A DNA stretch of 63,642 nucleotides, counting the filler, from Octopus bimaculoides (taxonomy: Eukaryota): NCBI RefSeq assembly GCF_001194135.2. It is 5 parts of 4 records of this genome, joined end to end, with 100 filler letters (N's around TTAATTAATTAA, not from the genome) between each part and the next. Parts side by side here need not be neighbours in the genome. Positions count along the whole stretch, not along the records: positions 37,693 to 62,441 come from NC_068985.1; 4 more parts are not named here. The stretch is one strand, 5' to 3'. This document shows positions 40,792-53,050 of this stretch, piece after piece. The notes under the pieces were generated by a model. That model saw only the letters and a list, made by a program, of their open reading frames with translations, was not told the DNA's origin and searched no databases. Both the position numbers and the translations under genes were made by a program. Numbering within the stretch: the stretch's first letter is position 1; each line of letters begins with the position of its first letter.

Positions 40792-41157
40792 AACCTTATC
40801 CTCGACTTACGACCGAGTTCCAATTCCGACTGACAGGTCATAAGTCGATCTGGTCGAATGTCGGATTTATATTTTTCTATTCTATTTTCATTCAAACGCA
40901 ATTGATGCTTGAAAGCGAGCGAGTGAGAGAGAGTGGCAGGCGCAGTGGATGCCTAGGTCTGAGGGAGGCATCTGCGTTGCCAGATGCTGCCATAATTATC
41001 GTACGGGCAGCTGCCCAACGTCCGAAGATCAATTTTTAAAATTTATTTATTTTTCCATTTCCTTATTTTTTGTGGTCGTAAGTCGCATAGGTCGTAAGTC
41101 GCATAAGTCGTAAGTCGCATAGATCGTAAGTCGCATAGGTCGTAAGTCGAGGAGGTG
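40792..41157. mobile_element. Tigger/pogo-like MITE with a tandem subterminal 16-mer array
   Basis: TA-flanked; TIR core TCCTCGACTTACGACC (40799-40814 and 41138-41153); five tandem GGTCGTAAGTCGCATA-like units at 41074-41153. Confidence 0.8.
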
Positions 41158-41428: not shown

Positions 41429-43459
41429 GGCACAGGCGTGGGTGCCTGGTAAGAAGCTTGCTTCCCAACCACATGTTTCCGAGTTCATCCCCACTGCGTG
41501 GCATCTTGGACAAGTGTCTTCAACTATAGCCTCGGTCCGATCAAAGCCTTGTTAGTGGATATGGTAGACGGAAACTGAAAGAAGCCAGTTGTGTGTTTGT
41601 GTCTGTGTTTGTCTCCCAACCCACCATCGCTTGGTGTGTTTACATCCACGTAAATTAGCAGTTCGGTAAAAGAGACCGATAGAATAAGTACAGGNNNNNN
41701 NNNNNNNNNNNNNNNNNNNNNNNNNNNNNNNNNNNNNNNNNNNNNNNNNNNNNNNNNNNNNNNNNNNNNNNNNNNNNNNNNNNNNNNNNNNNNNNNNNNN
41801 NNNNNNNNNNNNNNNNNNNNNNNNNNNNNNNNNNNNNNNNNNNNNNNNNNNNNNNNNNNNNNNNNNNNNNNNNNNNNNNNNNNNNNNNNNNNNNNNNNNN
41901 NNNNNNNNNNNNNNNNNNNNNNNNNNNNNNNNNNNNNNNNNNNNNNNNNNNNNNNNNNNNNNNNNNNNNNNNNNNNNNNNNNNNNNNNNNNNNNNNNNNN
42001 NNNNNNNNNNNNNNNNNNNNNNNNNNNNNNNNNNNNNNNNNNNNNNNNNNNNNNNNNNNNNNNNNNNNNNNNNNNNNNNNNNNNNNNNNNNNNNNNNNNN
42101 NNNNNNNNNNNNNNNNNNNNNNNNNNNNNNNNNNNNNNNNNNNNNNNNNNNNNNNNNNNNNNNNNNNNNNNNNNNNNNNNNNNNNNNNNNNNNNNNNNNN
42201 NNNNNNNNNNNNNNNNNNNNNNNNNNNNNNNNNNNNNNNNNNNNNNNNNNNNNNNNNNNNNNNNNNNNNNNNNNNNNNNNNNNNNNNNNNNNNNNNNNNN
42301 NNNNNNNNNNNNNNNNNNNNNNNNNNNNNNNNNNNNNNNNNNNNNNNNNNNNNNNNNNNNNNNNNNNNNNNNNNNNNNNNNNNNNNNNNNNNNNNNNNNN
42401 NNNNNNNNNNNNNNNNNNNNNNNNNNNNNNNNNNNNNNNNNNNNNNNNNNNNNNNNNNNNNNNNNNNNNNNNNNNNNNNNNNNNNNNNNNNNNNNNNNNN
42501 NNNNNNNNNNNNNNNNNNNNNNNNNNNNNNNNNNNNNNNNNNNNNNNNNNNNNNNNNNNNNNNNNNNNNNNNNNNNNNNNNNNNNNNNNNNNNNNNNNNN
42601 NNNNNNNNNNNNNNNNNNNNNNNNNNNNNNNNNNNNNNNNNNNNNNNNNNNNNNNNNNNNNGACATGCATTCTCTCCTGATGATTCCATAAACTTGCTAG
42701 TATCTGCAAGTTGTCTACAGAAAACATACATATGTAGTGTCATAGGCCAAAAACATTTTTAACTTCTTGGCTAGTGCGAGCCCAGTGCAATATCACATCT
42801 CCACTCTTGCAGTATTACTTGTCAAAAGTGAAACAATAACATCTCTATTGTAATGTCAGATATTTTCACTTTAATACTTTCATTTTAATACTGAAACTAT
42901 TAAAGTGAAACTATTATCTCACATATATACAGGCATATATACATATATACATGCATACATATATACCCCAATACACACACACATACACACACACATATAT
43001 ACGAAGGTGCAGGTGTGGCTGTGTGGTAAGAAACTTGGTTCCAAAACACATGTTCCTTCGTTCAGTCCCACTGTGTGGTGACTTGGCATGTGTCTTCTGC
43101 TATAGCCTCAGACTAGCCAAAGCCTTGTGAGTGGATTTCGTAGACAGAAAGTGAAAGAAATCANNNNNNNNNNTGTATGTACGTACGTATGTATGTATGT
43201 ATGTATGTATGTATGTATGTATGTATGTATGTACATATGTAAGTGTATATGTGTCTCTTTGTCTCTGTGTTTCTCCCTCATCACTGCTTCACAACTGGTG
43301 CTCGTTTATTTACATGCCCATAACTTACTGGTTCGACAAGAAGAGACTGATAGAATAAGTACCAGGCTTATGAAAATAAAAAAAAGCACAAGGCAGTGTC
43401 TCATATTTTTGTTTGCCCACTCAGTTGTCTCTATCAATCTATCTATTTGTTTGTGTGTA

Positions 43460-43538
<79 letters not shown>

Positions 43539-43582
43539 CACACACATACACATATACATGTATGTATATGTGCATATTCATA

Positions 43583-45273
43583 TCTATTATACAAAAGTCA
43601 ATGTCTTTATGTGTGTTCGTGTGTTACTTATACATTCGAAAACTACTGCACCGATCCTAATGAAATTTGGAACACAAAATCCAAGCCTAGGGAGAAGGGT
43701 AATGCTGTGTATTTCATACAATTTCATGGACCAAAATTACTGAATGGATCCTATGATATTTGGAACTTAGATTCAACGCATAAGGGCGAGTATAATGCAA
43801 TATGTTTGGTTTGAATTTGAGAAGGCTTCAAGGGGGCAAAACCCCCATGAAAATTCATAAATTTTCGATGTTGATGAAATTTCAACCATGGGTAATTGAC
43901 ACACATCAAGAAGTATTCCCAAAGTTTCCACTTCTCATGAGGATTCTAAGACCCCCTAATGGGGGCCTTAACTCCCAAATTTTAGTCATTATTTTATGAT
44001 CCAAAACTAGGTCAAAAGTACTGAATGGATCTTTATGATATTTGGAAATTATATTCTCTGCATAAAAGCCATAACACCCATGAAAATTCATATATTTTGA
44101 CTGTTGATGAAATTTTAACCATAGATATTAGAAAAAATGAAGTAATATTTCTAAAATTTCATCTTCTTAGAAGTTAGAAAGACCCCTTCATGGGGACTTA
44201 ACACCCACAATTTAGTCATTTTTATCTAAGCAAAGACGAATACAGTTGTACTCTTGGAAGCTGTAGGGTCACCCGAGCATGAAAGATGAGCATTATTTGT
44301 AATTCAATGTTACAACAGTGTAAGAGTTTGCTTTGAGATATACTTAGATTGTGATTTCTGCAATGTGGTGCCTAAATTGTCAAGTAAATGACAGGCATCT
44401 TTGCCTCCACTGATTCAGTTGCAAAGTGTCGAGTAAAGTTATTTGGTTGCAGACCTCCTTTGAGTCTTTTTATTATCACTGGGACACACATAGTCCCCAG
44501 ATGGTAACATTGATTTCAAGGCCTTCCCAGATGAGTGACTGGTTATTCAAAGGCATTTATAGATTGTAAATTTATTCTGTCCAGTTACCTATCGGTATAG
44601 CGGTCATTTGCAAACTCCAGAGGTGACACTTTCATTTCTCCTTAGCCCTCACGCCACGCAGTTGTTTATGTTTATTTGAGTTGGGTCACGCCCTTCCAAT
44701 TGCTATAGATCGGTAATGCATCTTACGGTTGTGTCTGTCACCTGTATGGTGAGGAATCCTACATTGGGAGTGGTAACGATTAGGGTAGGGTAGCTGACTG
44801 CTTATTGTGATCATTCGTCTTTTGGTTTCCTATAGCTTTGCTCTCTTTTACAAACCCAGGAAACATACAGATATTTCCTATTTCAAAGAAATTCAAACAA
44901 TAGATATAAGACCCAAGTTAAAAAGATTCTCAGCAATTCAACTTCTCTGGTTGACATTAAGACACCCACCCCCAATAGGGGCCTTAACTCCCACATCTTA
45001 GAGCTCTATGACATCCATTTTTCAGGAGTAAAATCCTTTTAACAGGTTCCATTAGATTGGAATTTTGGAATCTGCGCATAAAGATCAATAGTATGGGATA
45101 CATGTGTCATGATTAAAATTTTTTAGGGTGTGTAAAGAGGGAAAGAACGCTCATCTGCAATTTTGATGAAATTCGAATCATAGGTATTCCAGTTCATTAG
45201 AGAAAATGTAACAGAAAAGTCTAATAATTCTTCAATTGAATATAACACGGGCAACGCCGGGTATCTCTGCTAG
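43583..45273 (+). mobile_element. Non-autonomous Helitron
   Basis: A|TC 5' end; CGGGCAACGCCGG hairpin then CTAG|T 3' end; internal duplicated module of about 290 bp. Confidence 0.75.
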
Positions 45274-45352: not shown

Positions 45353-46383
45353 NNNNNNNNNNNNNNNNNNNNNNNNNNNNNNNNNNNNNNNNNNNNNNNN
45401 NNNNNNNNNNNNNNNNNNNNNNNNNNNNNNNNNNNNNNNNNNNNNNNNNNNNNNNNNNNNNNNNNNNNNNNNNNNNNNNNNNNNNNNNNNNNNNNNNNNN
45501 NNNNNNNNNNNNNNNNNNNGGTATTTCGTCTGCCACTGCGTTCTGAGTTCAAATTCCGCCGAGGTCGACTTTGCCTTTCATCCTTTCGGGGTCGATAAAT
45601 TAAGTACCAGTTACGCACTGGGGTCGATATAATCGACTTAATCCGTTTGTCTGTCCTTGTTTGTCCCCTCTGTGTGTAGCCCCTTGTGGGCAGTAAAGAA
45701 ATAGGTATTTCGTTTGTCTTTTCGTTCTGACTTCAATTTCCGCCGAAGTCGACTTTGCCTTTCATCCTTTCGGGGTCGAAAGGATGTATACTGGGATCGA
45801 TGTAATTGACTCTCCAAAAATTTCGGGCCTTGTGCCTAGAGTAGAAAAGAATATATATATAAAACACACACATATATTGTATATTTATATGTATGTCTGT
45901 GCGTATATATATATAAATATATATATACATATTTACACATATATGTAAATATTCATACACACATATGTTTTATGAGTGTGTGTATGTGGGAGTGTATATA
46001 TCCTTGTATTACATGTATGTGTGAGTGTGTGTAAATATATATGTATATATATATATCCTCTCCATATATATGCATGCGTATGTGTGTGTGTGTTTGTATG
46101 TATACATCCGAAGACAGACAGGCACACACACACACATACACTCCTCTACACACACATTTATATGCAATCTTAGAAAGCAGCCTCATGCGCCAAAGAAACC
46201 GTTAGGCTCGCGCAGATAGGACACAAACCGTTGGACGCGCACACATACAGACGCAGATGCTTACGTATGTGCATATGTGTGTGTGTGTGTGTATATGTGT
46301 GTACGTGAGTGCGTGTGCGTATGTGTGTGTGTGTGTGTGTATGTATGTGTGTTATCCCGAATTTAATAAGTAACATCACCAAA

Positions 46384-46448: not shown

Positions 46449-46866
46449 AGAGTCTTTGCTTCTCTTGGAATTTTTTATCAGTTTATCTCCTTGATCCAGT
46501 TTACATTCAATTTACGCATATATACATATATATGTATATTATATACCAATGGACCTAAACTAAGACAATGGACTTAAACTATAGGACGGACAAACTTTAC
46601 CAAATGTTTTATTAGTCTAACGCTTTATAGGAGAAAGGGAACGAGTCATTTTTTGAGAAAAATATTTATAAATCCTTACTTGGATATGTGTACAAAAATA
46701 TTCATGTCAACCAGGAAGGAAAAGATAAATCAGAACATTTTATATATATTTTAAATGTCTCTGTGTCTTATACTGTGCACCACTTTCTACTGAAACAGCA
46801 AACAGAATTTTGCAAAAGTTTCATTGCCATATATGGGTAATTAGCTTCTTTAGTTGTTCTGTCTAC

Positions 46867-46928
<62 letters not shown>

Positions 46929-47056
46929 ATCTATCTATCTGTGTTTGTGTGTCTATCTATCTGTCTGTCTGTCTTTCTGTTTATCTATTTATACACACCC
47001 CTACTCCACCCCACTCACACACATATACATCACGCATCCAATACCAAACTACCAGC

Positions 47057-47569
47057 ATGGTGGATGATGATGAAGACACCAAATCTATTTCCCCAGACTG
47101 TTTGGACACAACAAGGAACTACGTCAACATGGTTTTCTGTTGTTCTTACTCTTCTCTTAAAGCGGATGACGGTAGTGAGATTGTCGTCAATAAAGATGAC
47201 GTTGCTACCACCCCTCCTGTTCCGGCAACTGACCCTCTTGATACTGCTGTTGAAGATGACGGAAGTGGTGATGACGTTGATCGCGCTGCTGCTAAAACTA
47301 CTTCGGCTACTGTTAATATTGCAGAGGATGTCCCTGCCATTGCTGATCCTAATCCTAATGCTGTTGGTGATCCTAATCCTAATGCTGTTGGTGATCCTAA
47401 TCCTAATGCTGTTGGTGATCCTCCTACTGTTGCTGCTATCCATAACGTGGTTAACAATTCTGTTGATGAGAGTGTACGAAAGCAATCAAGGGTCAGTTGG
47501 TCAGACCAGAAGGTGATTATAGAGGATAAAAAGAAGAAGAAAGCAGGAAAAAAAGGAAATCCCTTCTAG
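47057..47569 (+). CDS. Orphan acidic low-complexity protein, 170 aa, with (DPNPNAVG)x3
   Basis: ATG in strong context (AGCATGG) after a possible accag acceptor; TAG at 47567-47569; structured termini (VFCC, RVSW, KKKKKAGKKGNPF). Codons are heavily NNT, so openness could partly reflect cryptic trinucleotide repeats. Confidence 0.55.
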   Translation: MVDDDEDTKSISPDCLDTTRNYVNMVFCCSYSSLKADDGSEIVVNKDDVATTPPVPATDPLDTAVEDDGSGDDVDRAAAKTTSATVNIAEDVPAIADPNPNAVGDPNPNAVGDPNPNAVGDPPTVAAIHNVVNNSVDESVRKQSRVSWSDQKVIIEDKKKKKAGKKGNPF

Positions 47570-47692: not shown

Positions 47693-47731
<39 letters not shown>

Positions 47732-47756
47732 ACAGACACACANNNNNNNNNNNNNN

Positions 47757-47813
<57 letters not shown>

Positions 47814-47854: not shown

Positions 47855-49062
47855 TTAAGTAACACAGAGCTTTCGACATGCATTGTGCAACATAGAACTA
47901 CCACCACGTACATTATATAGTACCAGTATGCTACCAGTATGCTACAGGTGTTTAGCGGAATGTACTACAGCACTAATAAGAGAAACTGACATACCTCATT
48001 GTTACAAACATTTATTGGTGTATTACAGTACTAAAAACAAGTATGAATGTACTACAGCACAAAGGACAGATATATATTTTCCATAATGCCAGGAACATCC
48101 TTGGGTGTACTACAGTACAAAAAGAAGCAGATATCAATGTACCGCAATGATTGGAATATCTATGGATGTACCACAGTACATCGAAATCAACGCACCAAAT
48201 GGCCAAAGTTCTGGATAAATAACAGAGCTGAAAATACGAGTGTTATAAGGATACATCAACCTACCTCATGATATATTCACTGTACCTCAGTGTGTTCAAG
48301 GTGGGTGGAAACGCTACAATATGTGCTATCGCCCATAAATACAGTCCGAACAACTATTATTATTGTTATTATTACAAGTGACATCCAATAATGTGCTATA
48401 AAACTTCTTGTATCCATAAATGAACCACAAATCTATTAATATATACGAATGTATGGAATAATACCAACGTAAAAGAGAACGACCAATATATGCGGGTATT
48501 CAAAAGAACTGCCCATGTATATTATGTAACACAGACCTAGAAGCATAATTATGTATCACAGACGTACCAGTATACTTTATACAACACAGAACTGTTATGT
48601 AACACAGAACTACTGAGTAAAACAGAACTCTAATGCAACACAGAAATCTCGACATACATTGTGCAACATAGAACTACGGCTATACATTATGTAACACAAA
48701 TATACCAAAATACACGATGTAATACAGAATTTCCAACATATATTATGTAACATAGACCTACTAACACACATAATGTAACACAGACCTACCAAAATGCATT
48801 GTGTGTAACACAGACCTACAAATATGCATTGTGTGTAACACAGACCTACAAATATATTTTATGTAACACAGGACAGATACGTAACTCAGAACTGTTGTGC
48901 AATACGGGATTATTATGTAACACAGAACTCTCAGTATAGTGTGCGTAACATTGAACTACTGCATTATACAATTAAAAAAATCTGCCAATATACATCATGC
49001 AACACAGAACTACCAACCAAGCAGAAACCCACCACCATACATACATTAAGTAACACAGAAAC
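47855..49062 (+). repeat. Diverged minisatellite of about 28-30 bp, core TGTAACACAGA(A/C)CTAC
   Basis: About 19 cores at 48525-49062 with variable linkers; a related TGTACTACAG(C/T)AC motif occurs five times at 47961-48179. Confidence 0.8.
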
Positions 49063-52000
49063 TAACGTAGATCATTTTATCACAGAATTACAGTATAGAT
49101 TTACAGCCAAAACTCTTGATAAAATCTCCTGGCATGATACACATGAAAAAGCATCATTGTTAATCTTTGAATTGAACCGTCCAGCGTTGCATGTCATCCA
49201 ATGTTTATAGTCGTTATAAATACACCATATCTTGCTGTTGTTGCTGAGTTTCGTCGATAATTTATTCTATCGAAAAGTTTGTTGTAAGATCTTATATTTT
49301 CCTCCCTATATTAGCAATCAACAAATGTCTCTTTCAATAATAATGGTTTCAAATTTTGATGCAAGGCCTGCAATTTTAGGAGGAAGGGTTTGGTCGATTA
49401 CGTCGACCTTAGTGCTAAACTGGTCCTTGTTTTATCGTCCCCGAAACGATTAAGAGCAAATTTAACCTCAACGGAATTTGAACTCAGAACGTAATGAATC
49501 GAAATAACGCGAAGCACTTTGTCCAACGCGTTAACGATTCTGCCAGCAATGAGAATTATATAATAGTTCTTTCTTCTGTAGGTACAAGGCTTGAAATTTT
49601 GAGACAGGGGTTATAGTTGATTACATCGACTCCAGTGCTCAACTGGTACTTATTTTATCGAACCCGAAAGGTAAAGTCTGCCTCAACGGAATTTTAACTC
49701 AGAACGTAAAGGATGGGATGAAATACCACCAGGCATTTTGTCCACTGTTTTAACAATTCCACCAGCTCCTCCTGCGACTCTGGACCAAACATGTTCGTAC
49801 GTGCAACGTCGAGCGACATTAGAGATAATGCAAAATGGACCAACACCACAACCAATGAGCCTTTTGAGAAGTTATAAACCTTCCTGAAACATCTTATTTC
49901 CTAACCTTAACCGACATCGTTGACAAGAAAACATTCTTTATTATTCAGTCGGAACTTCCTTAGTTTGTATGTCATACAAGCAGGTTTGCTAATAACTTCC
50001 TTATATATTCATTTCAAATTTTGGCAGAAGGCCAGCAATTTCGGTTGAGGGATAAGTCGATTACATCGACCCCGAGAGAATGGATGGCGGAATTTTAACT
50101 CTGAACGTAAGGACAGACGAAATGCTGCCAAGCATTTATTTTACCCGGCGTGCTAACGACTGTCAGTCATCTCGCCGCCTTTAACTCCCTTCTAGATTAA
50201 CAACCAATGAACGAAGATTTCTTTCAATGATAATTAAAACTGAATATTCTTATTTTTGCATTCTATGATAATAACAAACTCTAGACCAAACCTTTTCTAT
50301 GTGCAATGTCGAGCGACGTTAAGGAGAATTCAAAATACTCTAACGCCTTCAGTGAGGGTTTTAAGAAGCAATAAACCTTCTTAAAGCATCTTGTAACCAA
50401 CCACCTCAAGGGATATCGTTGATAAAAGAAAATTTCTACTATTATTCAGCTACAATTTCCTCAATTTATGTTTCTTTGAGGCAAGTTTAGTAACCTCCTC
50501 CTATATTATCTATCAACTATATATATTCTTTTCTACTCTAAGCACAAGGCCCGAAAAGTTTTGAAGAGGAGGCCAGTCGATTAGATCGACTCCAGTATGC
50601 AACTGGTACTTAATTTATCCACCCCGAAAGGATGAAAGGCGGAATTTGAACCAAGAACGTAAAGTCAGGCGAAATACCACTAAACATTTCGCCTGGCGTG
50701 CTAACGTTTCTTATTTCATTATTGCCCACGAGGGGCTACACACAAAGGGGACAAACAAGGACAGACAAACGGATTAAGTCGATTATATCTACCCCAGTGT
50801 GTAACTTGTACTTATTTAATCCACCCCGAAAGCATGAAAGGCAAAGTCGACCTCGGCGGAATTTGAACTCAGAACGTAGCGGCAAACGAAATACCGCTAA
50901 GCATTTCGCCTGGCGTGCTAACGTTTCTTATTTCGTTATTGCCCACAAGGGGCTAAACATAGAGGGGACAAACAAGGACAGACAAAGGGATTAAGTCGAT
51001 TACATCGACTCCAGTGCGTAGCTGGTACTTAATTTATCGACCCCGAAAGGAGGAAAGGCAAAGTCGACCTCGGTAGAATTTGAACTCAGAACGTAGCTGC
51101 AGACGAAATACAGCTAAGCATTTCGCTCGGCGTGCTAACGTTTCTGGCAGCTCGCCTTCAACTATATATACTATATTATCTATATTATCTATAACTATCA
51201 TTGGAAGTCAATGACAATTGTTTCAAATTTTGGCACAGTGCTTGCAGTTTTTTTTTTTTTTTTTTTTTTTTTGAGGAGAGGAGGAAGTCAATTACATTGA
51301 CATCTGTTTTTGATTGAACTGATACTTATTTAATCGACCCTGAAAGGGATGGAAGGCAAAGTTGACCTTGGCGGAATTTGAACTCAGAACGGACAAAATA
51401 TCGCAAAGCATTTTGCCCGTGTGCTAACAATTCTGCTAGCTCATCATTTCCAGTGATTAACCCTTTTTGCTATAGGCACAAGGCCTGAAATTTTTGGGAA
51501 AGGGGATGGTCGATTATATATGACTGATACTTATTTCATCGNNNNNNNNNNNNNNNNNNNNNNNNNNNNNNNNNNNNNNNNNNNNNNNNNNNNNNNNNNN
51601 NNNNNNNNNNNNNNNNNNNNNNNNNNNNNNNNNNNNNNNNNNNNNNNNNNNNNNNNNNNNNNNNNNNNNNNNNNNNNNNNNNNNNNNNNNNNNNNNNNNN
51701 NNNNNNNNNNNNNNNNNNNNNNNNNNNNNNNNNNNNNNNNNNNNNNNNNNNNNNNNNNNNNNNNNNNNNNNNNNNNNNNNNNNNNNNNNNNNNNNNNNNN
51801 NNNNNNNNNNNNNNNNNNNNNNNNNNNNNNNNNNNNNNNNNNNNNNNNNNNNNNNNNNNNNNNNNNNNNNNNNNNNNNNNNNNNNNNNNNNNNNNNNNNN
51901 NNNNNNNNNNNNNNNNNNNNNNNNNNNNNNNNNNNNNNNNNNNNNNNNNNNNNNNNNNNNNNNNNNNNNNNNNNNNNNNNNNNNNNNNNNNNNNNNNNNN

Positions 52001-52396
52001 NNNNNNNNNNNNNNNNNNNNNNNNNNNNNNNNNNNNNNNNNNNNNNNNNNNNNNNNNNNNNNNNNNNNNNNNNNNNNNNNNNNNNNNNNNNNNNNNNNNN
52101 NNNNNNNNNNNNNNNNNNNNNNNNNNNNNNNNNNNNNNNNNAAAAGACCTCGTGACCATCCACCTCAAGAAACATAGTTGATAAATGACCATTCTCAACT
52201 ATTCTTCACCTAGGACTTCCACATTGATTTCTTCAAATTTCAAACTTTTTCGAACTTTCTCGAAAATTTCCAAATTTTCCACACTTCTTCATATCTTGAA
52301 TAAATTATGAACTGTTTCTAATTTCGATGTTGGTTTCTTTTGTTTTTCTTTCTTTCTTTCTTTCTAATGATAGTGTGATGTTGAAAAGTACGATGG

Positions 52397-52428
<32 letters not shown>

Positions 52429-53050
52429 GTGATAGCGTTGATAGTGTTGACGGCGTTGGTGGTGGTAGAGGTGGTAGTGGTGATAGTAAGTATGACTGTG
52501 GTTGTGATGGTAGCAGTGACGGTGTTGATGGTATTGTTGGTGATAGTGTGATGGTGATGATGATGGTGGTGGTGGTGGTGGTGGTGATAATAGTAGTGGC
52601 ATTAGTGATTGAAGGTGATGGTGCTGTTAGAGTCGGCGGTGATGGTGGTCGAGCTGGTTGAAATGATGGTGAAGGTAGTGATGATGATGATGGTGGTGGT
52701 GGTGACGGTAGCTTTAGTAGTGATGGTAGTGATGGTAATGATGATAGCAGTGGTGGTGGTGATGATGGCGATGGTGGTAATATTATTTGTAGTGGTGGTG
52801 ATATCAGAGACGTTAGAATCAGTGATGAAGACGGAGGTGCAGAGCTGATAAAAACTTACATAAAATTTAGTAAACTTATGCCTATCCCATGACCAACATA
52901 GATTCTTCAAATCGATTATCCCACTTTACTGAAACCTGAACTTGTTCAAGGCCTCGTTTTATTTCTGAGTTTTTTTTGTTTTTTTTTCATACATTTGAAT
53001 ATACTTTACTTTATAAGAGCTCACTGCGCAAGCGCAAGATTACTTTTGAC

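What the first reader, a model, noticed from the sequence alone, without database searches (positions are those of the whole stretch)
47057..47569. Orphan acidic protein with membrane-anchor, PP1 and NPF motifs and CSP-like repeats
Seen: 170 aa rich in D/A/P/V; a second strong ATG at 47129 gives MVFCC; a 24-nt repeat x3.25 at 47345-47422 encodes DPNPNAVG; the protein ends KQSRVSW...KKKKKAGKKGNPF*. Established: N-terminal CC can be palmitoylated (GAP-43 starts MLCC), RVxF/W docks PP1, and NPF binds EH domains. Inference: a lineage-specific disordered membrane or endocytic adaptor, possibly born from NNT microsatellite sequence. The repeat resembles Plasmodium CSP NANP/NVDP by convergence only.
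Basis: partly seen in the sequence, partly recalled or inferred. Interest (0 to 1): 0.7.

Follow-up and report, generated by a model that had tools for sequence, protein, structure and literature searches.

The report
Chance reading frame in repeat DNA
The 170-codon reading frame is really there, but it is most likely a by-product of triplet-periodic repeat DNA that leaves four of six frames open; it has no relatives anywhere, and the only database protein at this spot is read from the opposite strand.

Summary
ORF 47057-47569 (+) translates as written, 47129 gives MVFCC, a 24-nt unit is repeated 3.5 times, and RVSW and a terminal NPF are present.

The protein interpretation is weak.
- The core (47165-47461) has T at 74% of third codon positions.
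- That periodicity leaves four of six frames open for 139-243 codons.
- The ATG comes from a (GAT)n remnant and the KKKKK tail from a T-free purine run.
- With this scaffolding kept and only the 47 non-repetitive codons randomised, the frame stays open in about 9% of trials.
- A second such block at 52390-52850 is broken by stops.

There is no Pfam or PDB match and no homologue in 5.8 billion proteins. An exhaustive HMMER scan of 1.84 billion found only four low-complexity repeat hits. AlphaFold gives pLDDT 43.5.

RVxF, RVxF-PhiPhi and NPF occur 0.36, 0.12 and 0.03 times per 170 aa in junk translations of the same DNA. There is no hydrophobic segment. MVFCC is N-terminal only if four upstream ATGs are skipped.

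The exact antisense ORF (47443-47030, 137 aa) is in UniRef, so the depositor's gene model is on the other strand. It too has no relatives.

Verdict: probably non-genic, at most a young proto-gene. Transcription could not be tested.

The parts
46858..46992 (.). (TCTA)n microsatellite, about 34 copies. It is stop-free in all + frames and extends the open frame upstream to 46841.
47057..47569 (+). The frame is stop-free from 46841.
47057..47077 (+). ATGGTGGATGATGATGAAGAC, a (GAT/ATG)n microsatellite remnant. It supplies the start codon, MVDDDED, and three out-of-frame ATGs at 47064, 47067 and 47070.
   Evidence: 86% match over 22 nt to the start of the 52393 block
47129..47131 (+). Second in-frame ATG (MVFCC), with A at -3 and G at +4. 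Four ATGs lie upstream of it.
47165..47461 (+). Triplet-periodic (RNT) block of 99 codons with T at 74% of third positions. T3 is 8 of 8 in the young core and falls to 4-6 of 8 outwards.
47340..47422 (+). 24-nt tandem repeat, 3.5 copies, 98% matches, encoding (N)AVGDPNP / DPNPNAVG.
47229..47257 (+). Older diverged copy of the unit (DPLDTAVED), 72% identical, offset 114 nt (a multiple of 3).
   Evidence: family D2
47489..47521 (+). RVSWSDQKVII, which matches the RVxF pattern plus PhiPhi at +5/+6.
   Evidence: motif definition from PMC10731240
47528..47559 (+). T-free A/G-rich run that encodes KKKKKAGKKG. No stop is possible in any + frame.
47558..47566 (+). C-terminal NPF.
47030..47443 (-). Antisense ORF in exact codon register, 137 aa (MDSSNSRRITNSIRIR...). 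This exact sequence is in UniRef/MetaClust, so it is the depositor's gene model.
47064..47516 (+). Overlapping +1-offset ORF, 150 aa from ATG (220 aa from TTG), Leu-rich. It is a by-product of the NTN phase.
47695..47811 (.). (CA)n microsatellite with a small assembly gap, bounding the locus downstream.

Best explanation
The ORF is a by-product of simple-sequence DNA, not a gene under selection for this protein. The locus is a patchwork:
- a (TCTA)n microsatellite;
- a (GAT)n remnant that supplies the ATG;
- a roughly 300-nt triplet-periodic R-N-T block with a freshly expanded 24-nt minisatellite at its centre;
- a T-free purine run.

Codons of the form NNT cannot be stops, and neither can their NTN phase or two of the antisense phases. 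Long open frames therefore arise on both strands automatically. Only 47 ordinary codons need to be stop-free by luck.

Shown: the periodicity, the multiple open frames, the chance estimate, and the lack of any relative.
Inferred: that no functional protein is made. The locus may still be transcribed, and an automated annotation did place a model here, on the other strand.
For: - T is 74% of third positions in the core. Period-3 power is in the top 1% of the piece, shared only with the block at 52390-52850.
- Four of six frames are open for 139-243 codons.
- The frame stays open in 9.2% of trials when the two non-repetitive flanks are dinucleotide-shuffled. It stays open in 8.6% when they are replaced by random real DNA of the piece.
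- A 155-aa ATG ORF at 43193-43660 runs purely through microsatellites.
- The sister NNT block at 52390-52850 is interrupted by stops and frame shifts.
- No Pfam, PDB or protein homologue. Four low-complexity hits to the repeat only.
- pLDDT 43.5, pTM 0.12.
- Mismatches of the 24-nt units to the core unit by codon position are 47, 53 and 28. Third positions are the best kept, the reverse of what purifying selection on a protein gives.
- The exact antisense ORF, not this one, is the one in UniRef. Sixteen other ORFs and start variants from this locus and elsewhere in the piece are absent from the collection.
Against: - This frame has the longest open stretch of the four.
- Its third positions are 69% A+T, in line with a 62% A+T genome, against 39% for the annotated antisense frame.
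- Both ATGs have a strong initiation context.
- The RVxF-PhiPhi string, with basic residues before and an acidic residue after, is a full match to the published pattern.
- A gene model exists at the locus, which may reflect transcript evidence.
- Young de novo genes are expected to look exactly like this.
- No expression or orthologue data could be consulted.
Confidence: 0.6

Rival explanations
1. The + strand ORF is a real, very young lineage-specific gene, born de novo from triplet-periodic repeat DNA. It would encode an acidic disordered protein with a basic tail that could dock PP1 through RVSW...VII.
For: - It is the longest of the open frames.
- Third positions are A+T-rich, as expected of sense codons in this genome.
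- The initiation context is good.
- It is a full RVxF-PhiPhi pattern match.
- Gene birth and ORF elongation by tandem repeats are documented elsewhere (PMC6410882, PMC12888051).
Against: - No homologue, and no annotation in this frame.
- ORF length is explained by the scaffolding at about 9%.
- The motifs are common in junk translation.
- Third positions are the most conserved.
- No fold is predicted.
Confidence: 0.18
2. The annotated antisense ORF (47443-47030, 137 aa, S/I/R/N/T-rich) is the real product.
For: - The exact sequence is in UniRef.
- The ATG has G at -3 and G at +4 (read).
- Sixteen other ORFs and start variants from this locus and elsewhere in the piece are not in the collection, so the model is not an indiscriminate call.
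Against: - It is the codon-for-codon mirror of the NNT frame: ANN codons with 61% A at position 1 and only 39% A+T at position 3 in a 62% A+T genome.
- It has no relatives.
- It is shorter than the sense ORF.
- It is not in the contig gene index.
Confidence: 0.06
3. The stretch is one exon, or a UTR, of a larger spliced gene or long non-coding RNA whose other parts lie outside the piece. The ATG-to-stop ORF would not then be the true product.
For: - The first AG after a long G-poor pyrimidine/CA-rich tract falls at 47054-47055, immediately before the ATG, like an acceptor site.
- AAG|GTGATT at 47511 resembles a donor site (both read).
- The piece holds no other recognisable coding sequence.
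Against: - The 18 nt before that AG are only about half pyrimidine.
- Any annotated protein sharing this exon would have been found, and none was.
- The splice-like signals are at chance level in such DNA.
Confidence: 0.08

Closest known systems
Spurious or 'shadow' ORFs in triplet-periodic simple-sequence DNA
   Same: RNY/NNT periodicity excludes stops in the sense frame, one shifted frame and the mirror antisense frame. The ORFs overlap on both strands, have no homologues and are of low complexity.
   Different: This frame extends about 47 ordinary codons beyond the repeat scaffolding and carries a good start context. That happens in about 9% of randomisations.
De novo genes born from or elongated by tandem repeats, such as gadid antifreeze glycoprotein (PMC6410882) and the human MYU ORF (PMC12888051)
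   Same: A short in-frame unit (here 24 nt, a multiple of 3) is amplified inside previously non-coding DNA, giving a repetitive disordered peptide with no relatives.
   Different: Those cases have demonstrated transcripts, translation, a secretory signal or function, and traceable non-coding ancestors in sister species. None of that could be shown here.
PP1-interacting proteins (RIPPOs) with RVxF-PhiPhi short linear motifs, such as PNUTS and NIPP1
   Same: RKQS-RVSW-SD-QK-VI fits [K/R]-x(0,1)-[V/I/L]-x-[F/W]. Basic residues precede it, an acidic residue follows, and PhiPhi sits 5 residues downstream, in a disordered context.
   Different: There is no sequence homology to any RIPPO family. The same extended pattern occurs 0.12 times per 170 aa in junk translation of this DNA. 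The resemblance to NIPP1's SRVTFSEDDEII is recalled from memory only.
Plasmodium circumsporozoite-type NANP/NVDP repeats
   Same: A short Asn/Pro/Asp/Ala/Val-rich tandem unit.
   Different: Only compositional. The exhaustive search returned four unrelated proteins with other G/D/P/N repeats and nothing outside residues 89-129.
GAP-43-type N-terminal dual palmitoylation (MLCC...)
   Same: A Cys-Cys pair lies 3-4 residues after a methionine.
   Different: That Met is residue 25, with four ATGs upstream. There is no adjacent basic cluster. Palmitoylation of GAP-43 is from general knowledge and was not tested here.

Membership tests
Protein-coding gene (any) | An ORF longer than local sequence structure allows by chance | tested here: not met
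   The frame is open in about 9% of trials once the stop-proof repeat scaffolding is kept. Four of six frames are open.
Protein-coding gene (any) | Homologues or conservation of the frame in other genomes | tested here: not met
   None in 5.8 billion clustered proteins. Only low-complexity repeat hits among 1.84 billion representatives. No cephalopod genome DNA was reachable, so synteny could not be tested.
Protein-coding gene (any) | Transcription and translation in this frame | not testable with these tools
   No RNA-seq, Ribo-seq or proteomics access. The only indirect hint is a UniRef entry for the antisense ORF.
Protein-coding gene (any) | A substitution pattern showing purifying selection (third positions least conserved) | tested here: not met
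   Among the 24-nt units, mismatches by codon position are 47, 53 and 28. The caveat is that alignment of the older units is only 38-54% identical.
PP1 regulatory/interacting protein (RIPPO) | RVxF motif [K/R]-x(0,1)-[V/I/L]-{P}-[F/W], usually with PhiPhi 5-8 residues downstream | tested here: met
   RVSWSDQKVII at residues 145-155. Frequencies are 8.6% (RVxF) and 1.35% (extended) in shuffles of the protein, and 0.36 and 0.12 per 170 aa in junk translation.
PP1 regulatory/interacting protein (RIPPO) | Motif conserved in orthologues, and binding to PP1 lost on V/W mutation | not testable with these tools
   No orthologues found. Binding needs a bench assay.
EH-domain ligands (NPF proteins) | NPF motif(s) in a disordered region, usually several, in an endocytic protein | tested here: inconclusive
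   A single NPF forms the last three residues. It appears in 1.6% of shuffles and 0.03 times per 170 aa in junk translation. No endocytic domain.
Lipid-anchored or membrane protein | A transmembrane segment, signal peptide, or Cys at the true N-terminus | tested here: not met
   The highest 19-residue hydropathy mean is 0.59. CC is at residues 28-29 of the ORF, and four ATGs precede the MVFCC start.
De novo gene born from tandem repeat | An in-frame tandem unit amplified within otherwise non-genic DNA | tested here: met
   24 nt x 3.5 at 98%, an older copy at 72%, and a T3 gradient from core to edges.
De novo gene born from tandem repeat | A non-coding ancestral state in outgroups plus an expressed, functional product in the focal lineage | not testable with these tools
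   No related genomes or expression data available.

The most novel reading that the evidence does not exclude
A very young protein-coding gene caught just after birth from triplet-periodic minisatellite DNA. The + strand ORF would be translated into an acidic disordered protein whose basic C-terminal tail carries a working RVxF-PhiPhi PP1-docking site. The mirror-image antisense frame would have been mis-annotated in its place.
Probability: 0.12. Interest if true: 0.55.

Novelty: not a real feature. Interest (0 to 1): 0.15.

Why it matters
If the null holds, this shows how NNT-periodic simple DNA produces long, plausible-looking ORFs on both strands. It also shows how such DNA seeds hypothetical-protein entries in databases: here the antisense frame is deposited while a reader picked the sense frame. 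That bears on orphan-gene counts in repeat-rich genomes.

If the ORF were expressed, it would be a compact example of gene birth from a minisatellite that already carries a complete PP1-docking string. That would be of moderate interest for studies of de novo genes, and it is cheap to test with existing RNA-seq.

Tried and rejected
- Pfam at E up to 10: only a 7.5-bit chance hit.
- PDB sequence search at E up to 10: only a 9-bit Ala/Pro-rich chance hit.
- Word-indexed search of 5.8 billion proteins: nothing.
- Exhaustive HMMER over 1.84 billion representatives: four hits, all confined to residues 89-129 and all unrelated G/D/P/N repeat proteins.
- Exact look-ups of the 170-, 146-, 206-, 220-, 150-, 151- and 103-aa variants: absent. 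Only the 137-aa antisense ORF is present.
- That protein has no relatives and no record in the contig index, so no flanking or orthologous DNA could be fetched.
- Control search with an ORF from the interspersed repeat, to see whether this genome's DNA is otherwise represented: nothing.
- Ten other ORFs from the piece: none in the collection.
- blastn and tblastn of the ORF against the piece: no paralogue, only weak simple-sequence matches to the 52.4-kb block.
- Rfam and tRNA scans of the piece: nothing.
- Degenerate and exact DNA patterns in metagenome and prokaryote genome collections: nothing, as expected.
- The original octopus genome paper is not held, so I could not check how the depositor's gene models were built. 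The organism was not established by any tool.
- I first thought the whole core was a 13-unit 24-nt array. I rejected this because the outer units are only 38-54% identical in register. Only four units plus one 72% relic are supported.
- Single-sequence AlphaFold gives no fold. That is uninformative between a disordered protein and no protein.

Full report
**What is there**

The piece (37693-62441) is A+T-rich eukaryotic DNA: 62% A+T, with 3456 of 24749 bases as N. It is dense in microsatellites, minisatellites and an interspersed repeat. No tool established the organism.

- It is 170 aa, with D 25, V 21, A 17 and P 15.
- It has 26 acidic against 6 basic residues in the first 135 aa, and 11 basic residues in the last 35.
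- ATG 47129 gives MVFCC.
- Tandem Repeats Finder reports a 24-nt unit at 47340-47422, 3.5 copies, 98% matches.
- RVSW (residues 145-148) and the terminal NPF are present.

**Anatomy of the locus**

The ORF is a mosaic of simple DNA.
- Upstream lies (TCTA)n at 46858-46992, then a G-poor stretch. Neither carries a stop in this frame, which is open from 46841.
- The start codon sits in ATGGTGGATGATGATGAAGAC, a (GAT/ATG)n remnant. It also creates three out-of-frame ATGs at 47064, 47067 and 47070. It is 86% identical over 22 nt to the start of another repeat block at 52393.
- The 99-codon core (47165-47461) has T at 74% of third positions, against 36% and 20% in the two ends. Its period-3 power is in the top 1% of the piece.
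- T at third positions is 8 of 8 in the three youngest 24-nt units and falls to 4-6 of 8 outwards. An older copy of the unit survives at 47229-47257 at 72% identity. This looks like a simple-sequence block with a young, recently amplified centre.
- The lysine tail is a T-free purine run (47528-47559) in which no stop can occur.

**Consequence for open frames**

NNT codons cannot be stops, nor can the NTN phase or two antisense phases. Accordingly four of six frames are open:
- 220 in the next + frame;
- 151 and 139 on the minus strand.

I kept all the stop-proof scaffolding and randomised only the 47 ordinary codons (47078-47164 and 47477-47529). The 170-codon frame stayed open in 9.2% of dinucleotide shuffles. 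It stayed open in 8.6% of replacements by random real DNA from the piece.

The 0.3% obtained from a plain shuffle of the whole piece therefore overstates the significance. Two natural controls lie nearby:
- A 155-aa ATG ORF at 43193-43660 runs through nothing but microsatellites.
- A second triplet-periodic block at 52390-52850 has the same GAT/GGT/AGT structure but is cut by stops and frame shifts.

**Relatives**

There are none.
- Pfam at E up to 10 and the PDB give only chance hits.
- The 5.8-billion-protein search found nothing.
- The exhaustive HMMER scan of 1.84 billion representatives returned four proteins. All matched only residues 89-129 through unrelated G/D/P/N repeats.
- No paralogue exists in the piece.
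- AlphaFold without an alignment gives pLDDT 43.5 and pTM 0.12. That fits disorder, or no protein at all.

**The opposite strand is what is in the databases**

I made exact look-ups of the possible products of all open frames. One is in the collection (UniRef/MetaClust): the 137-aa ORF on the minus strand, 47443-47030.
GAT CCT AAT CCT AAT GCT GTT GGT reads backwards as T N S I R I R I.
- Sixteen other ORFs and start variants, from this locus and elsewhere in the piece, are not in the collection. So the model is not part of an indiscriminate call.
- It has no relatives either and no record in the contig index.
- The disagreement itself shows that nothing beyond periodicity marks a specific frame.
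- The gene model may reflect transcript evidence. I could not check this, because the genome paper is not held.

**The motifs**

The RVxF definition and the PhiPhi spacing come from PMC10731240. RKQS-RVSW-SD-QK-VII meets the whole extended pattern. Two things weaken this.
- The pattern is cheap. RVxF appears in 8.6% and the extended form in 1.35% of shuffles of this protein. In six-frame translations of the surrounding non-coding DNA, RVxF, the extended form and NPF occur 0.36, 0.12 and 0.03 times per 170 aa.
- The three motifs were chosen after reading the sequence, from hundreds of known linear motifs.

The 'membrane anchor' is the weakest claim. There is no hydrophobic segment (highest 19-residue mean 0.59). 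CC is internal unless four upstream ATGs are skipped, one of them in an equally strong context and three leading into the Leu-rich overlapping frame.

**Selection**

Among the 24-nt units, mismatches to the core unit by codon position are 47, 53 and 28. Third positions are the best conserved. Purifying selection on a protein gives the reverse; a sequence-level triplet repeat gives this pattern. The alignment of the older units is weak, so this is supporting evidence only.

**Verdict**

Most likely (about 0.6) the ORF is a non-genic by-product of triplet-periodic repeat DNA, and the deposited antisense 'protein' is the same artefact seen from the other strand. The rivals are:
- a real, very young + strand gene (about 0.18);
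- the annotated antisense protein (about 0.06);
- an exon or UTR of something larger (about 0.08).

The adaptor function is not supported. Documented cases of gene birth and ORF elongation by tandem repeats (PMC6410882, PMC12888051) show the novel reading is possible. It needs transcripts, ribosome footprints and sister-species loci, none of which these tools could reach.

Noticed in passing
window 52390-52850: A second triplet-periodic block on the + strand: (GAT)14, then GGT/AGT/GTT triplets, with T at 74-84% of one codon phase. It starts with ATGGTGATGATG, like the ORF, but is broken by stops and frame shifts. Only short His-rich and Thr/Ile-rich ORFs lie on the minus strand.
   Followed up: partly
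window 50575-51368 (+) and 45520-45779 (-): Copies of an interspersed, SINE-like repeat. At 50638-51145 a 217-nt unit is tandemly duplicated 2.3 times at 88% identity. ARAGORN and Rfam do not recognise it.
   Followed up: partly
window 43193-43660: An ATG ORF of 155 aa that runs entirely through TGTA and TCTA microsatellites. It shows that long ORFs from simple DNA are routine in this piece. It is not in the protein collection.
   Followed up: yes
window 48682-48871 and 41074-41149: Minisatellites of 28-30 nt (about 6.6 copies, 77-85% matches) and 16 nt (4.8 copies, 93% matches).
   Followed up: no
window 37693-62441: 3456 of 24749 bases are N, in many gaps of different sizes, including 14 N inside the (CA)n just downstream of the ORF (47744-47757). 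It is a gap-rich short-read scaffold, so repeat copy numbers here may be unreliable.
   Followed up: no
Any leaky scanning would enter this frame before reaching 47129.
   Followed up: partly
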